Program-made: the position numbers and the translations under genes | Notes under the pieces: model-generated | Databases searched by the model: none | The model's input: only the letters and a program-made list of their open reading frames with translations | Told to the model about the DNA's origin: nothing | Shown: positions 12,612-55,013 of the stretch, in pieces | Numbering within the stretch: the first letter of the stretch is position 1 | How the letters are laid out: each line of letters starts with the position of its first letter | Source: Mustelus asterias | Taxonomy: Eukaryota | Length of the DNA: 64,000 nucleotides | Assembly (NCBI RefSeq): GCF_964213995.1 | Contig: NC_135830.1 | Span: forward strand, 19,468,001 to 19,532,000 | Direction of reading: 5' to 3'

Positions 12612-12923
12612 TAGAACAAAGAACAATACAGCACAGGAACAGGCCCTTCGGCCCTCCAAGCCCGTGCCGCTCCCTGGTCCAAACTAGACCATTCTTTTGT
12701 ATCCCTCCATTCCCACTCCGCTCATGTGGCTATCTAGATAAGTCTTAAACGTTCCCAGTGTGTCCGCCTCCACCACCTTGCCTGGCAGCGCATTCCAGGC
12801 CCCCACCTCCCTCTGTGTAAAATATGTCCTTCTGATATCTGTGTTAAACCTCCCCCCCTTCACCTTGAACCTATGACCCCTCGTGAACGTCACCACCGAC
12901 CTGGGGAAAAGCTTCCCACCGTT
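12612..12923 (-). mobile_element. CR1 subfamily B 3' end, module-free form
   Basis: ORF 12684..12896; a single copy of the 23-bp motif AGCCCGTGCCGCTCCCTGGTCCA precedes the tail. Confidence 0.9.
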
Positions 12924-16023: not shown

Positions 16024-16362
16024 CAAAAAAAACAAGCCCGAAGGCTCTGTGTTTCGATGTGAGGAACATTTGTAATAGGGTGGATGAATTAGCTGCGCAG
16101 ACAGTCATTAACGGATATGATGTAATTGGGATCACGGAGACCTGGCTCCAGGGTGACCAGGGATGGGAACTCGACATCCAGGGCTATTCAATATTCAGGA
16201 AAGATAGATGGAAAGGGGATTGGGAGGGTAGCATCACTGGTTAAAAAGGAGATTAATGCAATAGTAAGGAAGGGCATTAGCCCGGGCGATGTGGAATCTT
16301 AATGGGTGGAGCTGTGTAACACCAAAGGACATAAAAAGCTAGTGGGAGCAGTGTACAGACCA

Positions 16363-16964
16363 CAAAGAACAAAAAGAACAATACAGCACAGGAACAGGCC
16401 CTTCGGCCCTCCAAGCCCGCGCCGCTCCCAGGTCCAGGATTGAATCCTGAATCCAGGATCCCCGCCCAATTTTCCAGCCTATCTACATCCTAATATCCTA
16501 TCCACCGAGCTGTCCCTCACAGCTACGATGCTTTGTTCATCACAACCTATTAACTCACCCCCACCCCCCCCATTCCAGACCATGTGATCTCCAGGGAGAG
16601 GCGAAAACCCAGAGTGAAAACCCCAGGGCCAATATGGGGAAAAAAAAATCTGGGAAATTCCTCTCCGACCCCCTGAGGCGATCGAAACGAGTCCAGGAGA
16701 TCACACTGGCCCCGATCGGAAAATGCTTCCCAACCCTATTCATTTCCATTTCCACGAACACCATATGAATTCCCTGCCCCCGAGACAGGTTCCCAACTAT
16801 CCGCAGTCTCGCTCTGTACTGGCACCAGCAAGATGATCATAGAATGAAGCCTTGAAACGAGAAGCAAAGAACAATTAGCCCGCGCCGCTCCCTGGTCCAA
16901 ACTAGACCCCTCTTTTGTATCCCTCCATTCCCACTCCGTTCATATAGCTGTCGAGATAAGTCTT
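16363..16964 (-). mobile_element. CR1 subfamily B 3' end carrying a 440-bp extra module
   Basis: Tail at 16363; 23-bp direct repeats 16414-16436 and 16877-16899 flank the insert 16437-16876. Confidence 0.88.
16583..16712 (+). ncRNA. Candidate structured RNA (multi-stem, pseudoknot) inside the CR1 module
   Basis: Nested complementary pairs TGTGATCTCC/GGAGATCACA, GGAGAGG/CCTCTCC, CCCAGA/TCTGGG, CCCCA/TGGGG; loop GGGCCA pairs with TGGCCC at 16707-16712. Strand inferred only from A-rich linkers. Confidence 0.5.
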
Positions 16965-17689
16965 TAAAGCTGTTGTAGTGAGGCTGAGGATGGCATCAAA
17001 CTGGAAATTAGAGATGCGTGCAGTAGGGTACAGCAGTTACCATGGGTGACTTCAATCTGCATATTGATTGGGTTCACCAAACTGTTAGCAATGCGATGGA
17101 GGAGGATTTCTTAGAATGTATAAGGAATGGTTTTCTCAACCAAGATGTTGAGGAACCATCTAGAGAGTAGACCATCCTAGACTGGGTATTGTATAACGAG
17201 AGAGGATTAATTAGCAACCTTGTGGTGATCCTTTGGGGAGGAGTGACCATAATATGGTAGAATTCTTCATGAAGGTGGAGAGTGACACAGTTAAGTCTGA
17301 GACGAGGGTCCTGAACTTGAGGAAAGCTAACTTTGATGATTTGAGACATGCATTAGCTAGGATAAGATGGCAAAGGATACTTAAGGGGTTGACAGTGGAT
17401 AAACAATGGCAGACATTTAAAGAACACACAGATGAACTTCAACAAACTGTACATCCCTGTTCTGGTGTAAAAGTGTATTGGGGAAGAGTAAAACGGCTAA
17501 CAAGGGAAATCAGGGATAGTGTTAAAGCCAAAGAGGAGGTATATAAACTGGCCAGAAAAAGCAGCAAACCTGAGGACTGGGAAAAATTTAAAATCCGGCA
17601 GAGGAGGGCAAAGGGTTTATTTCGGAAGGGGAAAATAGAATACGAGAATAAGCTTGCAGAAAAAACTGACTGCAAAAGCTTCTATAGAT

Positions 17690-20868: not shown

Positions 20869-21510
20869 AGCAGGCAGTGATGTAAGCTAATGGTATGCTG
20901 GCCTTCATAACAAGAGGATTTGTGTATAGGAATAAGGAGGTCTTGCTGCAGTTACACAGGGCTTTGATGAGGCCACACCTTGAGTATTGTGCGCAGTTTT
21001 GGTCCAGTCTGAGGAAGGACATTTTTGCTATTGAAGGAGTCCAGTGAAGGTTCACCAGATTGATTCTTGGTATGGCAGGACTGACATATGAAGAGAGACT
21101 GGACTAACTGGGCTTGTACTCACTGGAATTTAGAAGAATGAGAGGGGATCTCATCGAAACATATAAAATCCTGATGAGGCTGCTGCGGGAAGAATGTTCC
21201 CAATGTTGGGGAAGTCCAAAACTAGGAGCCACAGTCTCAGAATAAGGGATGAGCCATTTAGAACTGAGATGAGGAAAAACTTCTTCACTCAGAGTTGTGA
21301 ACCTGTGGAATTCTCTACCGCGGAAAGCTGTTGGGGGCCTGTTTGTTAGGTATGTTCAGGAGGGAGTTGGATGTAGCCCTTACGGCCAAAGAGACCCAGG
21401 GGTATGGAGAGAAAGCAGGAGTGGGATACTGAAAGTGCATGATCAGCCACGATCATATTGAATGGTGCTGCAGGCTCGAAGGGCCGAATGGCCTACTCCT
21501 GCACCTATCT

Positions 21511-21818
21511 ACCAGGGTGGCACAGCGGTTAGCACTGCTGCCTCACAGCGCCAGGGACCTGGGTTCGATTCCCGGCTCGGGTGACTGCCTGTGTGGTGTC
21601 TGCACGTTCTCCCCGTGTCTGTGTGGGTTTCCTCCGGGTGCTCCGGTTTCCTCCTGCGGTCCAAAAGATGTGCTGGTTAGGGTGCATTGACCGTGCTAAA
21701 TTCTCCCTCCAGTGTAACCCGAACAGGCGCCGGAATGTGGCGACTGGGGGATTTTCAGAGTAACTTCTTTGCAGTGTTAATGTAAGCCTACTTGTGTCAC
21801 GAATAAATATACTTAAAC
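21511..21818 (+). mobile_element. V-SINE with alternative tail
   Basis: Same head and V-domain; tail ...GTAAGCCTACTTGTGTCACGAATAAA. Confidence 0.85.
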
Positions 21819-29449: not shown

Positions 29450-30550
29450 GGGAGATCAAATTGAGGTATTCAAGATGATAAAAGGTATGAATAAAGTAGA
29501 CGTGGAGTGGATGCTTCCGCTGGTGGGGCACTCGAGGACGAGAGGTCATAATCTTAGGATAAAGGGTCGCAAATTTAAAACAGAGTTGAGGAGAAACGAC
29601 TTCTCCCAAAGGGTTGTGAACTTGTGGAATTCGCTATGCCCAAGTGCGGTGGAGGCTGGGACAGAGAGTAAATTTAAGAAGTAGTTAGACAGATTTTTAA
29701 TTGGTAATGGGTTGAAAGGTTATGGGGGGAAGGCAGGGAAATGGGGATGAGGAGCATATCAGCCATGATCAAATGGCAGAGTGGACTCAATGGGCCGAAT
29801 GGCCTAATTCTGCTCCTATATCTTATGAACTTATTCTTTCCTTTCTTGTTCCCCCAAACCCCATGGTCCAATCAAACTGAAAGACGAAAATCAACAACCA
29901 AGTTGGCACCCAGGTTGATAGGGTTGTTAAGAAGGCGTACGGTGTGTTAGCTTTTATTGGTAGAGGGATTGAGTTTCGGAGCCAGGAGGTCATGCTGCAA
30001 CTGTACAAAACTCTGGTGTGGCCGCATTTGGAGTATTGCGTACAGTTCTGGTCGCCGTATTATAGGAAAGATGTGGAAGTGTTGGACAGGGTGCAGAGGA
30101 GATTTACCAGGATGTTGCCTGGTATGGTGGGAAAATCGTATGAGGAAAGGCTGAGGGGCTTGAGGTTGTTTTTGTTAGAGAGAAGGTTAAGAGGTGACTT
30201 AATAGAGGCATACAAGATGATCAGAGGATTAGATAGGGTGGATAGTGAGAGCCTTTTTCCTCGGATGGTGATGGCTAGCACAAGGGGACATAGCTTTAAA
30301 TTGAGGGGTGAGAGATTATAGGACAGATGTTAGAGGTAGGTTCTTTACTCAGAGAGTAGTAAGGGCGTGGAATGCCCTGCCTGCAGCAGTGGTGGACTCG
30401 TCAACGTTGAGAGCGTTCAAGTGGTTATTGGATAAACATACGGATGATATTGGAATAGTGTAGATTAGAGGGGCTTTAGATTGGTACCACTGGTCGGCGC
30501 AACATCGAGGGCCGAAGGGCCTGTACTGCGCTGTAATGTTCTATGTTCTT
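29450..30550 (+). mobile_element. Two tandem CR1 3' fragments (29450-29830, 29900-30550)
   Basis: ORFs 29475..29684 and 29944..30321; two separate tails. Confidence 0.88.
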
Positions 30551-43613: not shown

Positions 43614-44434
43614 TGGAAAATTGGGCGGAGAGGTGGCAGATGGAGTTTAATCCGGATAAATGCGAAGTGATGCATTTTGGAAGAAATAATGTAGGGAGGA
43701 GTTATACAATAAATGGCAGAGTCATCAGGAGTATAGAAACACAGAGGGACCTAGGTGTGCAAGTCCACAAATCCTTGAAGGTGGCAACACAGGTGGAGAA
43801 GGTGGTGAAGAAGGCATATGGCATGCTTGCCTTTATAGGACGGGGTATAGAGTATAAAAGCTGGAGTCTGATGATGCAGCTGTATAGAACGCTGGTTAGG
43901 CCACATTTGGAGTACTGCGTCCAGTTCTGGTCGCCGCACTACCAGAAGGACGTGGAGGCGTTAGAGAGAGTGCAGAGAAGGTTTACCAGGATGTTGCCTG
44001 GTATGGAGGGTCTTAGCTATGAGGAGAGATTGGGTAGACTGGGGTTGTTCTCCCTGGAAAGACGGAGAATGAGGGGAGATCTAATAGAGGTGTACAAGAT
44101 TATGAAGGGGATAGATAGGGTGAACAGTGGGAAGCTTTTTCCCAGGTCGGAGGTGACGATCACGAGGGGTCACGGGCTCAAGGTGAGAGGGGCGAAGTAT
44201 AACTCAGATATCAGAGGGATGTTTTTTACACAGAGGGTGGTGGGGGCCTGGAATGCGCTGCCAAGTAGGGTGGTGGAGGCAGGCACGCTGACATCGTTTA
44301 AGACTTACCTGGATAGTCACATGAGCAGCCTGGGAATGGAGGGATACAAACGAATGGTCTAGTTGGACCAAGGAGCGGCACAGGCTTGGAGGGCCGAAGG
44401 GCCTGTTTCCTGTGCTGTACTGTTCTTTGTTCTT
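43614..44434 (+). mobile_element. Young 5'-truncated CR1 subfamily A
   Basis: Open ORF to 44362, nearly identical to 50695-51523; TGTAACT duplication at 43607-43613 and 44435-44441. Confidence 0.95.
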
Positions 44435-49968: not shown

Positions 49969-50694
49969 CAAAGAACAAAGAAGAACAAAGAACAATACAG
50001 CACAGGAACAAGCCCTTCGGCCCTCCAAGCCCGCGCCGCTCCCCGGTCCAGGATTGAATCCTGAATCCAGGATCCCCGCCCAATTTTCCAGCCTATCTAC
50101 ATACCAATATCCTATCCACCGAGCTGTCCCTCACAGCTACGATGCTTTGTTCATTACAACCTATTAACTCACCCCCACCCCCCTATTCCAGACCATGTGA
50201 TCTCCAGGGAGAGGCGAAAACCCAGAGTGAAAAACCCCAGGGCCAATATGGGGAAAAAAAAAATCTGGGAAATTCCTCTCCGACCCCCTGAGGCGATCGA
50301 AACGAGTCCAGGAGATCACAATGGCCCTGATCGGAAAATGCTTCCCAACCCTAGTCATTTCCACTTCCATGAACACCATATGAATTCCCTGCCCCCGAGA
50401 CAGGTTCCCAACTATCCGCAGTCTCGCTCTGTACTGGCACCAGCAAGATGATCATAGAATGAAGCCTTGAAACGAGAAACAAGGAACAATTAGCCCGCGC
50501 CGCTCCCTGGTCCAAACTAGACCACTCTTTTGTATCCCTCTATTCCCACTCCGGTCATATAGCTGTCTAGATAAGTCTTAAACGTTCCCAGTGTGTCCGC
50601 CTCCACCACCTTGCCCGGCAACACATTCCAGGCCCCCACGACCCTCTGTGTGAAATATGTCCTTCTGATATCTGTGTTAAACCTCCCCCCCTTC
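49969..50694 (-). mobile_element. CR1 subfamily B 3' end carrying the ~440-bp module (second copy)
   Basis: Direct repeats 50028-50050 and 50492-50514 flank the insert 50051-50491. Confidence 0.9.
50196..50329 (+). ncRNA. Candidate structured RNA in the CR1 module (second copy)
   Basis: All stems seen at 16583-16712 are intact; differences are A-run lengths and bases next to the pseudoknot strand. Confidence 0.5.
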
Positions 50695-50774
50695 AAAGAA
50701 CAAAGAACAAAGAACAGTACAGCACAGGAAACAGGCCTTCGGCCCTCCAAGCCTGTGCCGCTCCTTGGTCTAAC

Positions 50775-53699
50775 TAGACCAATCGTTTGTATCCCTCCAT
50801 TCCCAGGCTGCTCATGTGACCATCCAGGTAAGTCTTAAACGATGTCAGCGTGCCTGCCTCCACCACCCTACTTGGCAGCGCATTTCAGGCCCCCACCACC
50901 CTCTGTGTAAAAAAACGTCCCTCTGATGTCTGAGTTATACTTCGCCCCTCTCAGCTTGAGCCCGTGACCCCTCGTGATCGTCACCTCCGACCTGGGAAAA
51001 AGCTTCCCACTGTTCACCCTATCTATACCCTTCATAATCTTGTATACCTCTATTAAATCTCCCCTCATTCTCCGTCTTTCCAAGGAGAACAACCCCAGTC
51101 TACCCAATCTCTCCTCATAGCTAAGACCCTCCATACCAGGCAACATCCTGGTAAACCTTCTCTGCACTCTCTCCAATGCCTCCACGTCCTTCTGGTAGTG
51201 CGGCGATCAGAACTGGACGCAGTACTCCAAATGCGGCCTAACCAGCGTTCTATACAGCTGCATCATCAGACTCCAGCTTTTATACTCTATACCCCGTCCT
51301 ATAAAGGCAAGCATACCATATGCCTTCTTCACCACCTTCTCCACCTGTGTTGCCACCTTCAAGGATTTGTGGACTTGCACACCTAGGTCCCTCTGTGTTT
51401 CTATACTCCTGATGACTCTGCCATTTATTGCATAACTCCTCCCTACATTATTTCTTCCAAAATGCATCACTTCGCATTTATCCGGATTAAATTCCATCTG
51501 CCACCTCTCCGCCCAATTTTCCAGCCTATCTATATCCTGCTGTATTGCCCGACAATGCTCTTCGCTATCCGCAATTCCAGCCATCTTTGTGTCATCCGCA
51601 AACTTGCTGATTACACCAGTTACACCTTCTTCCAAATCATTTATATATATCACAAATAGCAGAGGTCCCAGTACAGAGCCCTGCGGAACACCACTGGTCA
51701 CAGACCTCCAGCCGGAAAAAGACCCTTCGACCACTACCCTCTGTCTCCTATGGCCAAGCCAGTTCTCCACCCATCGAGCCACTTCTCCTTGTATCCCATG
51801 AGCCTTAACCTTCTTAACCAACCTGCCATGTGGGACTTTGTCAAATGCCTTACTGAAATCCATATAGACGACATCCACGGCCCTTCCTTCATCAACCGTT
51901 TTTGTCACTTCCTCAAAAAACTCCACCAAATTTGTAAGGCACGACCTCCCTCTTACAAAACCATGCTGTCTGTCACTAATGAGATTGTTCCGTTCTAAAT
52001 GCACATACATCCTGTCTCTAAGAATCCTCTCCAACAACTTCCCTACCACGGACGTCAAGCTCACCGGCCTATAATTTCCTGGGTTATCCCTGCTACCCTT
52101 CTTAAACAACGGGACCACATTCGCTATCCTCCAATCCTCAGGGACCTCACCCGTGTCCAAAGAAGCGACAAAGATTTCCGTCAGAGGCCCAGCAATTTCC
52201 TCTCTCGTCTCCCTGAGCAGTCGAGGTTAGATGCCATCAGGCCCTGGGGCTTTGTCAGTTTTAATGTTCCCTAAAAAACCTAACACTTCCTCTCTCGTAA
52301 TGGAGATTTTCTCTAACGGGTCAACACCTCCCTCCGAGACACTCCCGGTTAACACGCCCCTCTCCTTCGTGAATACCGATGCAAAGTATTCATTTAGGAT
52401 CTCCCCTATTCCCTTGGGTTCTAAGCATAATTCCCCTCCTTTGTCCCTGAGAGGTCCGATTTTCTCCCTGACAACTCTTTTGTTCCTAACGTATGAATAG
52501 AATGCCTTAGGATTCTCCTTAATCCTGCCTGCCAAGAACATCTCGTGCCCTCTTTTTGCCCTTCTAACTCCCCGTTTGAGATCTTTCCTACTCTCTCTGT
52601 ATTCCTCCAGAGCTCCATCTGTTTTCAGTTGCCTGGACTTAACGTACGCCTCCCTTTTCATTTTAATCAGATCCTCAATTTCCCTGGTTATCCACGGCTC
52701 TCGAATCCTACCTTTCCTATCTTTCCTTTTTACAGGCACATGCCTATCCTGCAGCCTTATCAATAGTTCCTTAAAAGACTCCCACATGCCAGACGCGGAC
52801 TTACCCTCGAACATCCTCTCCCAATCAACATCCACCAATTCCTGCCTAATCCGGCTATAGTCAGCCTTCCCCCAATTTAGCACCCTGCCCGTAGGACAGC
52901 ACTCATCCTTGTCCATTACTATCCTAAAGTTAACAGAGTTGTGGTCACTATTTGCCACATGTTCCCCTACCGAAACTTTGACGACCTGACCGGGCTCATT
53001 TCCCAGAACTAGGTCCAGTATAGCCCCCTCTCTAGTCGGGCTATCTACATACTGTTCCAAAGAACCTTCCAGTATGCATTTTACAAATTCCTCCCCGTCC
53101 GGTCCCCCAGCTCTAAGCACTTTCCAGTCTGTGCCAGGGAAATTAAAGTCCCCCACTACAACAACCCTATGTTTTCTGCACCTATCCAGAATCTCCTGAC
53201 ATATCCTTTCCTCCACTTCCCGTGGGCTGTTGGGTGGTCTGTAGTACACCCCCAGCATAGTGACTGCACCCTTCCTGTTTCTGAGTTCCACCCACAGCGA
53301 CTCAGTACATGACCCCTCTAAGTTGTCTACCCTCTGCACCGCGGTAATATGCTCCTTAACTAATATCGCTACTCCCCCACCTTTTTTAGCCCCTCCTCTG
53401 TCTCGCCTAAAACACTGATACCCCGGAATATTCAGCTGCCAGTCCTGTCCTTCTTTTAACCAAGTTTCCGTCACCGCAACCACATCCAAATTCCGCACAA
53501 GCATTAAGGCCCTAAGTTCGTCTGTTTTACCCGTTACACTCCTCGCATTGAAGCAGATGCACTCCAGACCTCCAGGCCCAGTCAGGTCCTCCTCCTCCAG
53601 AGTGCTCCTCTTCTTAGCTAGCCTTGCCCTGGCCCCCAGCTCGACCCCAGCCTCAGTATTTACTGACCTCCTGTTTTGTTCCCCACCCCCCTGCCACAC
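50775..53699 (-). pseudogene. CR1 ORF2 (APE endonuclease + reverse transcriptase), two nonsense changes and one frameshift
   Basis: ORFs 52227..53699, 51207..52160 and 50868..51185 are in the same frame. Confidence 0.93.
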
Positions 53700-54727
53700 T
53701 AGTTTAAATCCTGCCGAAACACTCGAGCAAAACTCCCAGCCAGGATATTTGCTCCCTTCCAGTTAAGGTGTAACCCATCCTTTCTGTACAGTTGCCATCC
53801 TGACTTGAAGATTTCCCAGTTATCTATGAATTTAAAACCCTCCCTCTTGCACCAGTCCTTTAGCCACGCGTTCAACTGTAGAATCTCCCTGTTCCGAGCC
53901 TCACTTGCACTAGGCACCGGGAGCAGTCCAGAGATTGCTACACTGGAGGTCTTACTTTTTAGCCTAGCACCCAACTCCCTGAATTTCTCTCGTATGACCC
54001 CCCTGCTCTTCCTACCTACATCATTTCCCCCAATGTGTACAATCACATCCGTTTGACTACCTTCCTTTTTAAATATGCTTCCTACCCTCTCGGAGACATC
54101 CAGTACCCCGGCACCAGGGAGGCAGACTACCATCCTGGATTCTCGTTCAGTCCCACAGAAGCGCCTGTCCGTGCCTCTAACTATTGCGTCCCCCACAACT
54201 ATCGCTCTCCTAAACCCCTTCTTTCCCTTCCGGACCCCTGAGCCTGTCCCCGTGGAGGCGATCTGGTCCTCGTGGCTTACCCCTGGAGGGTCATCCCCCT
54301 CCACAGAATCCAAAACAATATACCTATTGTGGAGGGGGACAACCACAGGGGATCTCTCCACAGACTGCTCACTCCCTTCCCTTCTCCCATCTGTTGCCCA
54401 TCCCTTTCTCTTATGGGAGACTGCTACTGGGGTGCTTTCTGGCACATCACCCTTCTGACTATTACCCCTCCTAACCGTGACCCACGTGTCTTCCTTCCGA
54501 GACCCTGGTGTCACTACCTGACTATAACTTTTATCTATGACTCTCTCATTTTCCCTAACTAAACTGAGTTCATCAAGCCTCAGCTCCAGCTCCCTTACAC
54601 GATCCTTCAGGAGATGCAGTTCCACACATCTGGCACAGATATGGACTTCCGGGAGGCAAGTTGTCTCCAGGAACTCCCACATCCCACACCGAATGCAGTA
54701 TACTGGCCTCCCACTCATACCAGCCAT
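53699..54727 (-). CDS. CR1 ORF1 protein: CxxC..CxxC motif, leucine zipper, SGNH/GDSL esterase-like domain
   Basis: CIRC...CARC, heptad leucines LKDRVRELELRLDEL, blocks VVGDAIVRG, HIGGND and DGLH; ATG at 54727. Confidence 0.88.
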   Translation of the reverse strand: MAGMSGRPVYCIRCGMWEFLETTCLPEVHICARCVELHLLKDRVRELELRLDELSLVRENERVIDKSYSQVVTPGSRKEDTWVTVRRGNSQKGDVPESTPVAVSHKRKGWATDGRREGSEQSVERSPVVVPLHNRYIVLDSVEGDDPPGVSHEDQIASTGTGSGVRKGKKGFRRAIVVGDAIVRGTDRRFCGTERESRMVVCLPGAGVLDVSERVGSIFKKEGSQTDVIVHIGGNDVGRKSRGVIREKFRELGARLKSKTSSVAISGLLPVPSASEARNREILQLNAWLKDWCKREGFKFIDNWEIFKSGWQLYRKDGLHLNWKGANILAGSFARVFRQDLN

Positions 54728-55013
54728 GTCCTTTTTAGTTTTGGGGATAAAACAAAAAGGGGGTGTAACCGAAGAAAAACAAACAAACAACCTTCCTCGC
54801 CGAAGCCCTGTGAGTCAAAGCCCTTTTAGCTCTCACTCTGTCCCCTGCTCACTCCACTGCCCGCTAACGACGCTGCCCGCTCAAAGGTGCGGCCTACTTT
54901 TAAACCCTCCAAAATCTTCCCAGGCTGCTGCTGGGCCTATTTCCTGTTTAGAAAAAAAAAAACCTCCGATTTTTTTCACTAATTGAACTGAAAAATAATT
55001 AAATAAATTAATT

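What the first reader, a model, noticed from the sequence alone, without database searches (positions are those of the whole stretch)
16414..16899. A ~440-bp passenger module with a pseudoknotted RNA fold rides in the 3' UTR of one CR1 subfamily
Seen: the same CR1-B 3' end occurs empty at 12612-12923 and filled at 16363-16964 and 49969-50694. The filled form has a 440/441-bp insert between ORF2 and the terminal stem-loop, bounded by 23-bp direct repeats (AGCCCGCGCCGCTCCCNGGTCCA) of a motif present once in the empty form. The insert holds nested perfect stems: TGTGATCTCC/GGAGATCACA (16583-16592/16696-16705), GGAGAGG/CCTCTCC, CCCAGA/TCTGGG and CCCCA/TGGGG. The apical loop GGGCCA can pair with TGGCCC just outside the closing stem (pseudoknot). 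A side arm CGA-CC-CC..GG-CGA-TCG and flanking hairpins (CAGGATT/AATCCTG, AGCTGT/ACAGCT, CGAGAC/GTCTCG) are also present. The two copies sit at independent insertion sites, and the differences I noticed fall outside these stems. The A-rich linkers lie on the strand antisense to the LINE. Inference: a functional RNA element (ribozyme, export/translation element or hitch-hiking RNA parasite) propagated by CR1. It does not fit hammerhead, HDV-like or twister consensus by eye. From memory, and unverified, a similarly built motif (GGAAGGCRAAAAACCC...GGGAAAATTCCTTCCYGACYCC...GGCRATCAG) lies near CR1 3' ends in frogs and turtles, which would imply deep conservation with compensatory changes.
Basis: partly seen in the sequence, partly recalled or inferred. 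Interest (0 to 1): 0.85.

Follow-up and report, generated by a model that had tools for sequence, protein, structure and literature searches.

The report
Passenger DNA between two CR1 tails
A very abundant CR1-type jumping gene carries about 440 bases of captured sequence, apparently trapped between two copies of its own 3' end, and nothing yet shows that the neat RNA hairpin inside it has a function.

Summary
The sequence facts hold. A 440/441-bp insert (16437-16876 and 50051-50491, 96.8% alike) lies in the 3' UTR of a minus-strand CR1-type LINE. It is bounded by 23-bp direct repeats, is absent from the empty form at 12612-12923, and sits at two independent insertion sites.

I read the repeats differently. 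In LINE sense, the upstream repeat is followed directly by a remnant of the CR1 terminal microsatellite, and the 31-nt terminal hairpin segment is missing there. The other end of the insert is a 33-nt patch of CR1 reverse-transcriptase coding sequence. So the repeats look like the overlap of two partial CR1 3' ends, not a target-site duplication. The passenger would be copied because only the distal 3' end still has the hairpin.

Function as an RNA is not shown:
- Rfam gave nothing credible.
- Fold z-scores of -2.6 and -3.3 are matched by about 3% of random windows here.
- None of 28 variable sites falls in a stem, but within the core that gives only P = 0.10, and no stem position varies, so covariation could not be tested.
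- No further copies could be fetched.

The scan flagged this module at seven or more other places in this genome.

The parts
16363..16396 (-). Distal (working) CR1 3' terminus of copy 1. It holds the microsatellite tail (TTGTTCT-like units in LINE sense) and the bases up to the hairpin.
   Evidence: It aligns to the ends of the empty copies. The target flank begins at 16362.
16397..16409 (-). Terminal CR1 stem-loop (GGGCC GAA GGGCC in LINE sense). This is the presumed binding site of the reverse transcriptase.
   Evidence: It is shared with the empty copies at 12642 and 50734. The role is inferred from stringent-type LINEs (PMC4176376 abstract; PMC4316615 passage).
16414..16436 (-). Direct repeat DR2, the distal copy of the 23-bp CR1 3' UTR motif.
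   Evidence: Position 16430 is A in copy 1, C in copy 2 and in 58% of X1 depth, and T in DR1 and the empty form.
16437..16491 (-). Patch of CR1 reverse-transcriptase coding sequence at the LINE-sense 3' edge of the module (reads DVDRLENWAG..FN). The firm part is 16459-16491.
   Evidence: 33 bp at 94% identity to 51506-51538; tblastn E = 0.003. One search gives the ORF2 protein.
16492..16574 (.). Module segment of unknown origin. It includes a poly-C run with length variation at 16564.
   Evidence: Searches found no match elsewhere in the window or to CR1 ORF2; a variant in run X15 lacks 16486-16564.
16575..16725 (.). Structured core: four nested perfect helices (28 bp), a small side hairpin and an extended closing stem. 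It folds as a three-way junction in LINE sense.
   Evidence: -51.8 kcal/mol on the plus strand, -63.8 on the minus strand; z = -2.6 and -3.3; 5 variable sites, none in the four stems.
16726..16834 (.). Module segment of unknown origin. This and the tail-remnant parts to 16876 form the most variable stretch across runs.
   Evidence: 14 of 28 variable sites lie in 16781-16876.
16835..16848 (-). Possible remnant of an L2/SINE-type terminal repeat (TTCATTCTATGATC in LINE sense). This is weak evidence.
   Evidence: the 10-mer occurs 12 other times in the window, all 12 at L2/SINE-type 3' termini; 57 of 1000 shuffles score as well against a tail probe.
16854..16876 (-). Internal, dead CR1 tail remnant directly after DR1 in LINE sense. 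The 31-nt hairpin segment that should separate them is missing.
   Evidence: One search shows the alignment to the empty 3' end in both filled copies; 12 of 1000 shuffles reach the score anywhere in the module; here it sits at module bases 3-17.
16877..16899 (-). Direct repeat DR1, the proximal copy of the 23-bp motif. It continues upstream into the CR1 3' UTR and the end of ORF2.
16900..16967 (-). Proximal CR1 3' UTR and the last ORF2 codons of copy 1, which is 5'-truncated at about 16967.
   Evidence: 90% identity to the empty copy; reads ...LDSYMNGVGMEGYKRGV*.
49969..50695 (-). Second filled copy: tail and hairpin, DR2 50028-50050, module 50051-50491, DR1 50492-50514, then the end of ORF2. 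It is inserted at the tail of a full-length CR1.
12612..12923 (-). Empty form of the same 3' end, with a single copy of the 23-bp motif.
   Evidence: The same uninterrupted architecture is seen in more diverged copies at 44123-44433 (87.5%), 50704-51014 (85.3%) and 30245-30549 (67%).

Best explanation
The filled form is a composite 3' UTR made of three parts, in LINE sense:
- a CR1 element whose own 3' end has lost the terminal hairpin, keeping the 23-bp motif and a microsatellite remnant;
- about 360 nt of foreign sequence, which includes an imperfect 123-nt inverted repeat;
- a second, partial CR1 piece made of a 33-nt RT-coding patch, the 23-bp motif, an intact hairpin and the tail.

The 23-bp direct repeats are what the two partial 3' ends have in common. 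They are not a target-site duplication.

The composite most likely arose in one of two ways. Transcription of a progenitor copy may have read through into a nearby CR1 3'-end fragment, as in 3' transduction. Or the reverse transcriptase may have switched templates during cDNA synthesis.

A stringent-type LINE reverse transcriptase starts at the hairpin plus microsatellite, and only the distal one is intact. Every new copy therefore has to include the passenger. This lineage then became a very successful, young subfamily.

Shown: the architecture, the independent insertions and the high copy number. Inferred: how the capture happened, which 3' end the enzyme uses, and that the passenger is functionally neutral.
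For: -: in both filled copies DR1 is followed by one base and then ATTGTTCTTTG(C/T)TTCTCGTTTC. This aligns to the CR1 terminal repeat with the 31-nt hairpin segment skipped.
- only 12 of 1000 shuffles of the module reach that match anywhere, and here it sits at the very edge, at module bases 3-17.
- the opposite edge is a 33-bp patch, 94% identical to CR1 RT coding sequence.
- the rest of the module is no more like ORF2 than chance. 30 of 100 shuffles score as well.
- the empty architecture is shared by copies that are 85%, 87% and 67% diverged, so the empty form is ancestral and the filled form derived. The filled copies are 96.8% alike, so they are young.
- copy 2 sits head-to-tail on the tail of another CR1. 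CR1 3' ends do therefore end up next to each other in this genome.
- contigs cover the whole module in four runs. None of the loose ends listed begins at a module edge, but 351 loose ends were not shown.
- Stringent recognition of the 3' stem-loop by LINE ORF2 comes from the PMC4176376 abstract and passages of PMC3747384 and PMC4316615.
Against: - The tail remnant is only about 22 nt and the RT patch only 33 nt. I did not find the progenitor locus or an orthologous single-copy source of the foreign part.
- The L2-type tail remnant is not significant. 57 of 1000 shuffles score as well.
- Random captured DNA does not by itself explain four perfect nested helices separated by linkers that are A-rich on both arms of the same strand.
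- None of 28 variable sites falls in the 56 stem bases. That gives nominal P = 0.022 under a uniform rate and 0.10 within the core, which leaves room for constraint.
- I saw two full copies plus contig-level variant tables, not a sample of individual copies.
Confidence: 0.6

Rival explanations
1. The roughly 125-nt core is a functional cis-acting RNA that gave the filled subfamily an advantage. It might aid stability, export or translation, recruit a protein, or be an unknown ribozyme. This is compatible with origin by capture.
For: - The LINE-sense fold is well defined. The minimum-energy structure equals the centroid and holds 18% of the ensemble, at -63.8 kcal/mol, and 0 of 200 shuffles fold as well.
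- None of 28 variable sites lies in the four stems.
- The core and the left part differ by about 2% in the X16 contig covering 16400-16687. The right part differs by about 9% (15 of 173).
- The subfamily is very abundant and is held by runs of several organisms.
Against: - Rfam gave nothing at gathering scores and nothing credible at E up to 10.
- About 3% of random windows here fold as well.
- Within the core the lack of stem changes has P = 0.10. No stem position varies, so there is no compensatory change at all.
- The A-rich linkers typical of structured RNAs are on the strand that the LINE does not transcribe.
- All holders share near-identical 31-mers, so conservation may only reflect youth.
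Confidence: 0.12
2. The module plus the distal 3' end is a separate non-autonomous retroposon that borrows the CR1 tail, as a SINE does. It landed on the tail of a CR1 copy, and the pair then moved as one unit.
For: - Insertion onto a CR1 tail is seen directly at 50695/50696.
- The CR1 tail region is shared with other elements. Loose ends at 16417 and 16424 lead into other sequences.
- SINE/LINE tail sharing is documented for sharks and rays as HE1/HER1 (PMC3747384, table passage).
Against: - No tRNA gene was found in the module.
- There is no Rfam match to tRNA, 5S, 7SL or snRNA at E up to 10.
- None of the listed loose ends shows the module's LINE-sense 5' edge joined to other flanks, though 351 were not shown.
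- No stand-alone copy lies in the 64-kb window.
Confidence: 0.15
3. This is an ordinary transposable-element insertion (SINE, MITE or other) into the 3' UTR of a master CR1, and the 23-bp repeats are its target-site duplication.
For: The insert is exactly bounded by 23-bp direct repeats of a motif that is single in the empty form.
Against: - One edge of the insert is a sense-oriented CR1 tail remnant and the other a CR1 RT patch. A foreign element's termini would not look like that.
- The central inverted repeat has no flanking duplication of its own.
- The module has no other match in the window.
- From recall, 23 bp is long for a duplication made by this kind of element.
Confidence: 0.08

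Closest known systems
L1 3' transduction (recalled from established knowledge; no paper read here)
   Same: Sequence downstream of the element's own 3' end is carried along and becomes part of later copies. The element's own end signal is bypassed.
   Different: L1 needs only a downstream poly(A) signal. A stringent CR1 needs a specific hairpin and microsatellite, supplied here by a second partial CR1 3' end. The passenger also became fixed in a whole large subfamily, not in single offspring.
Stringent-type LINE 3' tails and tail-sharing SINEs (UnaL2/UnaSINE1, ZfL2, HER1/HE1)
   Same: A terminal stem-loop plus short repeats is the only part needed in cis. Anything upstream of it can be mobilised (PMC4176376 and PMC1636434 abstracts; PMC3747384 passages).
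   Different: Here the cargo stays attached to the autonomous LINE, between ORF2 and the tail, rather than forming a separate short element.
Composite or chimeric retroposons made by template switching, such as U6-L1 chimeras and SVA (recalled; PMC3287187 seen only in a search listing)
   Same: The product is a patchwork of unrelated pieces joined at short homologies. A short patch of the LINE's own coding sequence sits out of place.
   Different: There is no small-RNA or Alu-like component that I could recognise, and the composite keeps full LINE coding capacity upstream.
Curated structured RNAs of mobile elements in Rfam (hammerhead, HDV-like, UnaL2 3' element, R2 element, s2m)
   Same: It is a compact multi-helix fold in a retroelement's untranslated region.
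   Different: No model matches. The best E-values were 0.49-7.7 to unrelated families, far below gathering scores.

Membership tests
CR1-clade (stringent-type) LINE 3' end | ORF2 C-terminus directly upstream of the UTR | tested here: met
   Searches give ...FTQR.VGAWN.LPGKVVEADTLGTFKTYLDS...EGYKR.V* on the minus strand. One search found 21 of 21 candidate proteins of the same kind at E <= 0.001.
CR1-clade (stringent-type) LINE 3' end | Terminal stem-loop followed by a short tandem repeat tail | tested here: met
   GGGCC GAA GGGCC at 16397-16409, then TTGTTCT-like units. The same is seen in the empty copies.
CR1-clade (stringent-type) LINE 3' end | 5'-truncated copies at independent sites | tested here: met
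   the copies are truncated at about 16967 and 50695 and have unrelated flanks.
3' transduction / read-through capture | The passenger lies downstream of a recognisable 3' end of the element itself | tested here: met
   a tail remnant follows DR1, with the hairpin segment deleted.
3' transduction / read-through capture | The passenger ends at a second usable 3' end signal | tested here: met
   DR2, an intact hairpin and the tail lie at 16363-16436.
3' transduction / read-through capture | The passenger matches unique DNA flanking a progenitor locus | not testable with these tools
Known RNA families (ribozymes, small RNAs, cis elements; Rfam 15) | Covariance-model score at or above the gathering threshold | tested here: not met
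   One search found 0 matches in 64 kb. Searches gave best scores of 9-18 bits against thresholds of 42-100.
Functional structured RNA (general) | Compensatory changes, or slower change in stems than in loops | tested here: inconclusive
   0 of 28 variable sites lie in stems (P = 0.022 under a uniform rate, 0.10 within the core). No stem position varies, so no covariation can be seen.
tRNA-derived SINE | tRNA-like head with polymerase III boxes | tested here: not met
   ARAGORN found no tRNA in the module; no tRNA model hit at E up to 10.
Transposon insertion with target-site duplication | The insert's termini belong to the inserted element, not to the host element | tested here: not met
   both edges are CR1-derived, a tail remnant and an RT patch.

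The most novel reading that the evidence does not exclude
The three-way-junction RNA of about 125 nt is a new cis-acting element, picked up by chance, that raised the retrotransposition success of one CR1 lineage. It would be an example of a LINE domesticating a captured structured RNA. If so, the stems are under purifying selection in master copies across elasmobranch species.
Probability: 0.1. Interest if true: 0.7.

Novelty: new variant of a known kind. Interest (0 to 1): 0.3.

Why it matters
If the composite reading is right, it shows a route by which a stringent-type LINE can acquire and fix new 3' UTR content. Such a LINE cannot simply use any downstream poly(A) site. The route is to lose its own hairpin and borrow the 3' end of a neighbouring fragment. 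That bears on how CR1 subfamilies diversify in elasmobranch genomes. CR1-group elements make up 22-34% of those genomes (PMC13343379, passage).

It also has a practical use for this scan. The module is a high-copy repeat that first readers flagged many times. One explanation covers all those notes. The hairpin remains a cheap candidate for a proper covariation test.

Tried and rejected
**Whole module as a decayed RT-coding fragment.** By eye I saw possible YADD-like and LGPLLF-like stretches. tblastn with the window's RT protein supported only the DVDRLENWAG..FN patch (E = 0.003; next best 0.37). A local DNA alignment of the other 380 nt to ORF2 was matched by 30 of 100 shuffles. Rejected.

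**Known RNA families.** Rfam found nothing at gathering scores on 64 kb. Permissive scans of 701 nt and 171 nt gave only chance-level hits. By reading, CTGAGGCGATCGAAAC resembles a hammerhead core but lacks the GA after the variable base. No hammerhead model hit.

**tRNA head.** ARAGORN found none in the module.

**More copies for a covariation test**
- One metagenome scan gave a single chance match inside a bacterial-looking coding sequence (L001).
- Viral contigs gave 0 and genome contigs gave 0.
- A protein search with the last 59 ORF2 residues gave 21 short proteins, 20 from ENA and 1 from JGI.
- Covariation models, R-scape-like counts and cross-species alignments were therefore not possible.

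**L2-type tail remnant as support for a read-through origin.** The exact 10-mer is tail-specific in the window, with 12 of 12 other occurrences at tails. The alignment test was not significant, with 57 of 1000 shuffles scoring as well. I kept it only as a hint.

**Depth as copy number.** Read laying itself warns that contig depth cannot rank parts. I use only the number of pieces laid and where they lie.

**Papers**
- I saw passages of PMC3747384, PMC4316615 and PMC13343379, and the abstract and outline of PMC4176376.
- I saw search listings and abstract starts for PMC1636434, PMC3287187 and the rest.
- None of the passages I saw describes this module. Searches did not turn up a description.
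- Repbase and Dfam, and supplementary files, were not available and may well hold it.

Full report
**1. What is there**

The LINE lies on the minus strand. Reading the minus strand gives the end of ORF2 (...FTQR.VGAWN.LPGKVVEADTLGTFKTYLDS...EGYKR.V*). Then come a short UTR, a terminal stem-loop (16397-16409) and a TTGTTCT-like microsatellite at the lowest coordinates.

The empty form is 12612-12923. Two copies carry an extra 440/441 bp, at 16437-16876 and 50051-50491, and are 96.8% identical. Each insert is bounded by 23-bp direct repeats, and the motif is single in the empty form.

The two copies are separate insertions.
- Copy 1 interrupts the endonuclease-coding part of a plus-strand LINE. 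This is seen by reading.
- Copy 2 sits head-to-tail on the tail of a full-length CR1 at 50695/50696.

All four nested perfect stems, the loop/flank complementarity and the short flanking hairpins are at the stated coordinates. The 14 differences between the copies avoid the stems.

**2. Is the empty form ancestral?**

Yes. The uninterrupted architecture is shared by copies at 87.5%, 85.3% and 67% identity to the empty one, at 44123-44433, 50704-51014 and 30245-30549. The two filled copies are 96.8% alike. The filled form is therefore a young derivative.

**3. How common is it?**

- The look-up of sequencing runs listed 20 runs from 14 studies that hold at least part of the 440 bp. Ten hold half or more of the sampled words. 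They belong to organisms coded A to G, and smaller shares are held by H, I and some RNA libraries.
- Run X9 has only 33 million letters yet holds 52% of the words. That fits a high copy number.
- With contigs of four runs laid on 16300-17000, X1 gave 20,521 pieces, X13 gave 53, X15 gave 143 and X16 gave 5. Contigs cover the module end to end. The tool warns that contig depth cannot be used as copy number, so I do not use it that way.
- The X16 contig covering 16400-17687... more exactly 16400-16687 differs at 5 bases and 4 gaps. The contig covering 16768-16940 differs at 15 of 173.
- One X15 variant replaces 16486-16564 with 10 other bases.
- The scan's notes list the same module at seven or more other places in this genome. 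None has been followed up.

**4. What the repeats really are**

In LINE sense, DR1 is followed by one base and then ATTGTTCTTTG(C/T)TTCTCGTTTC in both filled copies. Aligned to the empty 3' end, this is the CR1 terminal repeat with the 31-nt hairpin segment left out. Only 12 of 1000 shuffles of the module reach that score anywhere, and here it lies at module bases 3-17, right at the junction.

At the other edge, next to DR2, there is a 33-bp patch that is 94% identical to CR1 RT coding sequence at 51506-51538. It translates as DVDRLENWAG..FN, against QQDIDRLENWAERWQMEFN in the window's ORF2 (E = 0.003). An earlier scan note had pointed to this patch, and I confirmed it.

The remaining 380 nt or so are no more like ORF2 than chance. 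They have no other match in the window.

The filled form is therefore, in order:
- CR1 ... DR1, no hairpin, dead tail;
- foreign sequence;
- RT patch, DR2, hairpin, live tail.

The 'direct repeats' are simply the part kept by both partial 3' ends. No coincidence of end points is needed.

A 10-mer typical of L2/SINE-type tails follows the dead tail. All 12 of its other occurrences in the window are at such tails. My alignment test for it was not significant, with 57 of 1000 shuffles scoring as well.

**5. Mechanism I commit to**

Stringent-type LINE ORF2 proteins recognise the stem-loop of their own 3' tail. This comes from the PMC4176376 abstract, a PMC4316615 passage on the conserved CR1 hairpin and octamer repeat, and PMC3747384 passages.

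A progenitor whose own hairpin was lost could be copied only from the next intact CR1 3' end downstream. That end could have been reached by read-through transcription, in the manner of 3' transduction. Or the same product could have been made by template switches of the reverse transcriptase. The short out-of-place RT patch fits template switching well. Either way the passenger is obligatorily copied.

I give this composite, passive-passenger reading 0.6. The choice between read-through and template switching is open.

**6. Is the core a functional RNA?**

Evidence for:
- The LINE-sense fold is well defined, at -63.8 kcal/mol, with the minimum-energy structure equal to the centroid and holding 18% of the ensemble. 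None of 200 shuffles folds as well.
- The plus strand is weaker, at -51.8 kcal/mol, with 2 of 200 shuffles as good.
- In the LINE-sense fold I read three G-U pairs from the dot-bracket. They would be mismatches on the plus strand.
- None of 28 variable sites, taken from the two copies and four runs, falls in the 56 stem bases.

Evidence against:
- My re-computed z-scores are -2.6 and -3.3. Of 215 random windows of this same 64 kb, 3.7% reach -2.7 and 2.8% reach -3.
- The nominal P = 0.022 assumes a uniform rate, but half the variable sites cluster in the right-hand 96 nt. Within the core there are 5 sites and P = 0.10. One of those sites hits a paired base of the LINE-sense fold.
- No stem position varies at all, so there is no compensatory change to count.
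- Rfam gives nothing.
- The proposed pseudoknot competes with the closing-stem extension. By my inference it would also have to bridge a 28-bp rod.
- The linkers are A-rich on both arms of the plus strand. That is not what a decayed inverted duplication would give, and I cannot explain it. It is the main reason I keep the functional reading at about 0.1.

**7. What could not be done**

No collection of vertebrate genomes or repeat libraries was at hand. The metagenome scan gave one chance hit. Supplementary files of papers were not consulted.

**8. Verdict**

This is a real, very abundant CR1 subfamily feature. Most likely it is captured sequence trapped between two CR1 3' ends. Interest is modest at 0.3. 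It would rise if a copy census shows constraint on the stems.

Noticed in passing
window 50696-54790 (minus strand): A near full-length CR1 with a 363-aa ORF1 (53699-54790) and ORF2 in three open pieces (52227-53699, 51207-52160, 50868-51185). Filled copy 2 is inserted exactly at its 3' tail, a head-to-tail tandem.
   Followed up: partly
window 43614-43757: A CR1 fragment 98.6% identical to the RT region of the full-length copy. It ends at 43614, inside the 33-nt site that also occurs in the module. An earlier scan note pointed to this. It may be a favoured break or switch point, or a coincidence.
   Followed up: partly
window 55377/57699, 56325/58491, 56429/58595: Three pairs of L2/SINE-type 3' ends have near-identical flanking sequence about 2.2-2.3 kb apart. 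This suggests a local tandem duplication of roughly 2.2 kb.
   Followed up: no
window 21510-21585: ARAGORN calls a tRNA-Cys-like sequence with anticodon ACA. In this repeat-rich setting it may be a SINE head and not a working tRNA gene.
   Followed up: no
window 16200-16362 and 16968-17100 (plus strand): This is the host of copy 1. It is another LINE, cut within its endonuclease-coding region (reads ...VELCNTKGHKKLVGAVYRP | ...GDFNLHIDW). An AAAG is shared at both junctions.
   Followed up: no
window 16372-16424: The CR1 hairpin and tail are joined in many contigs to sequences other than this 3' UTR (loose ends at 16417 and 16424 in four runs). The tail is therefore shared by other LINE subfamilies or tail-borrowing SINEs.
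   Followed up: no
L001 630-649: The only metagenome match to a 20-base core motif lies inside a bacterial-looking coding sequence. I judged it a chance match.
   Followed up: yes
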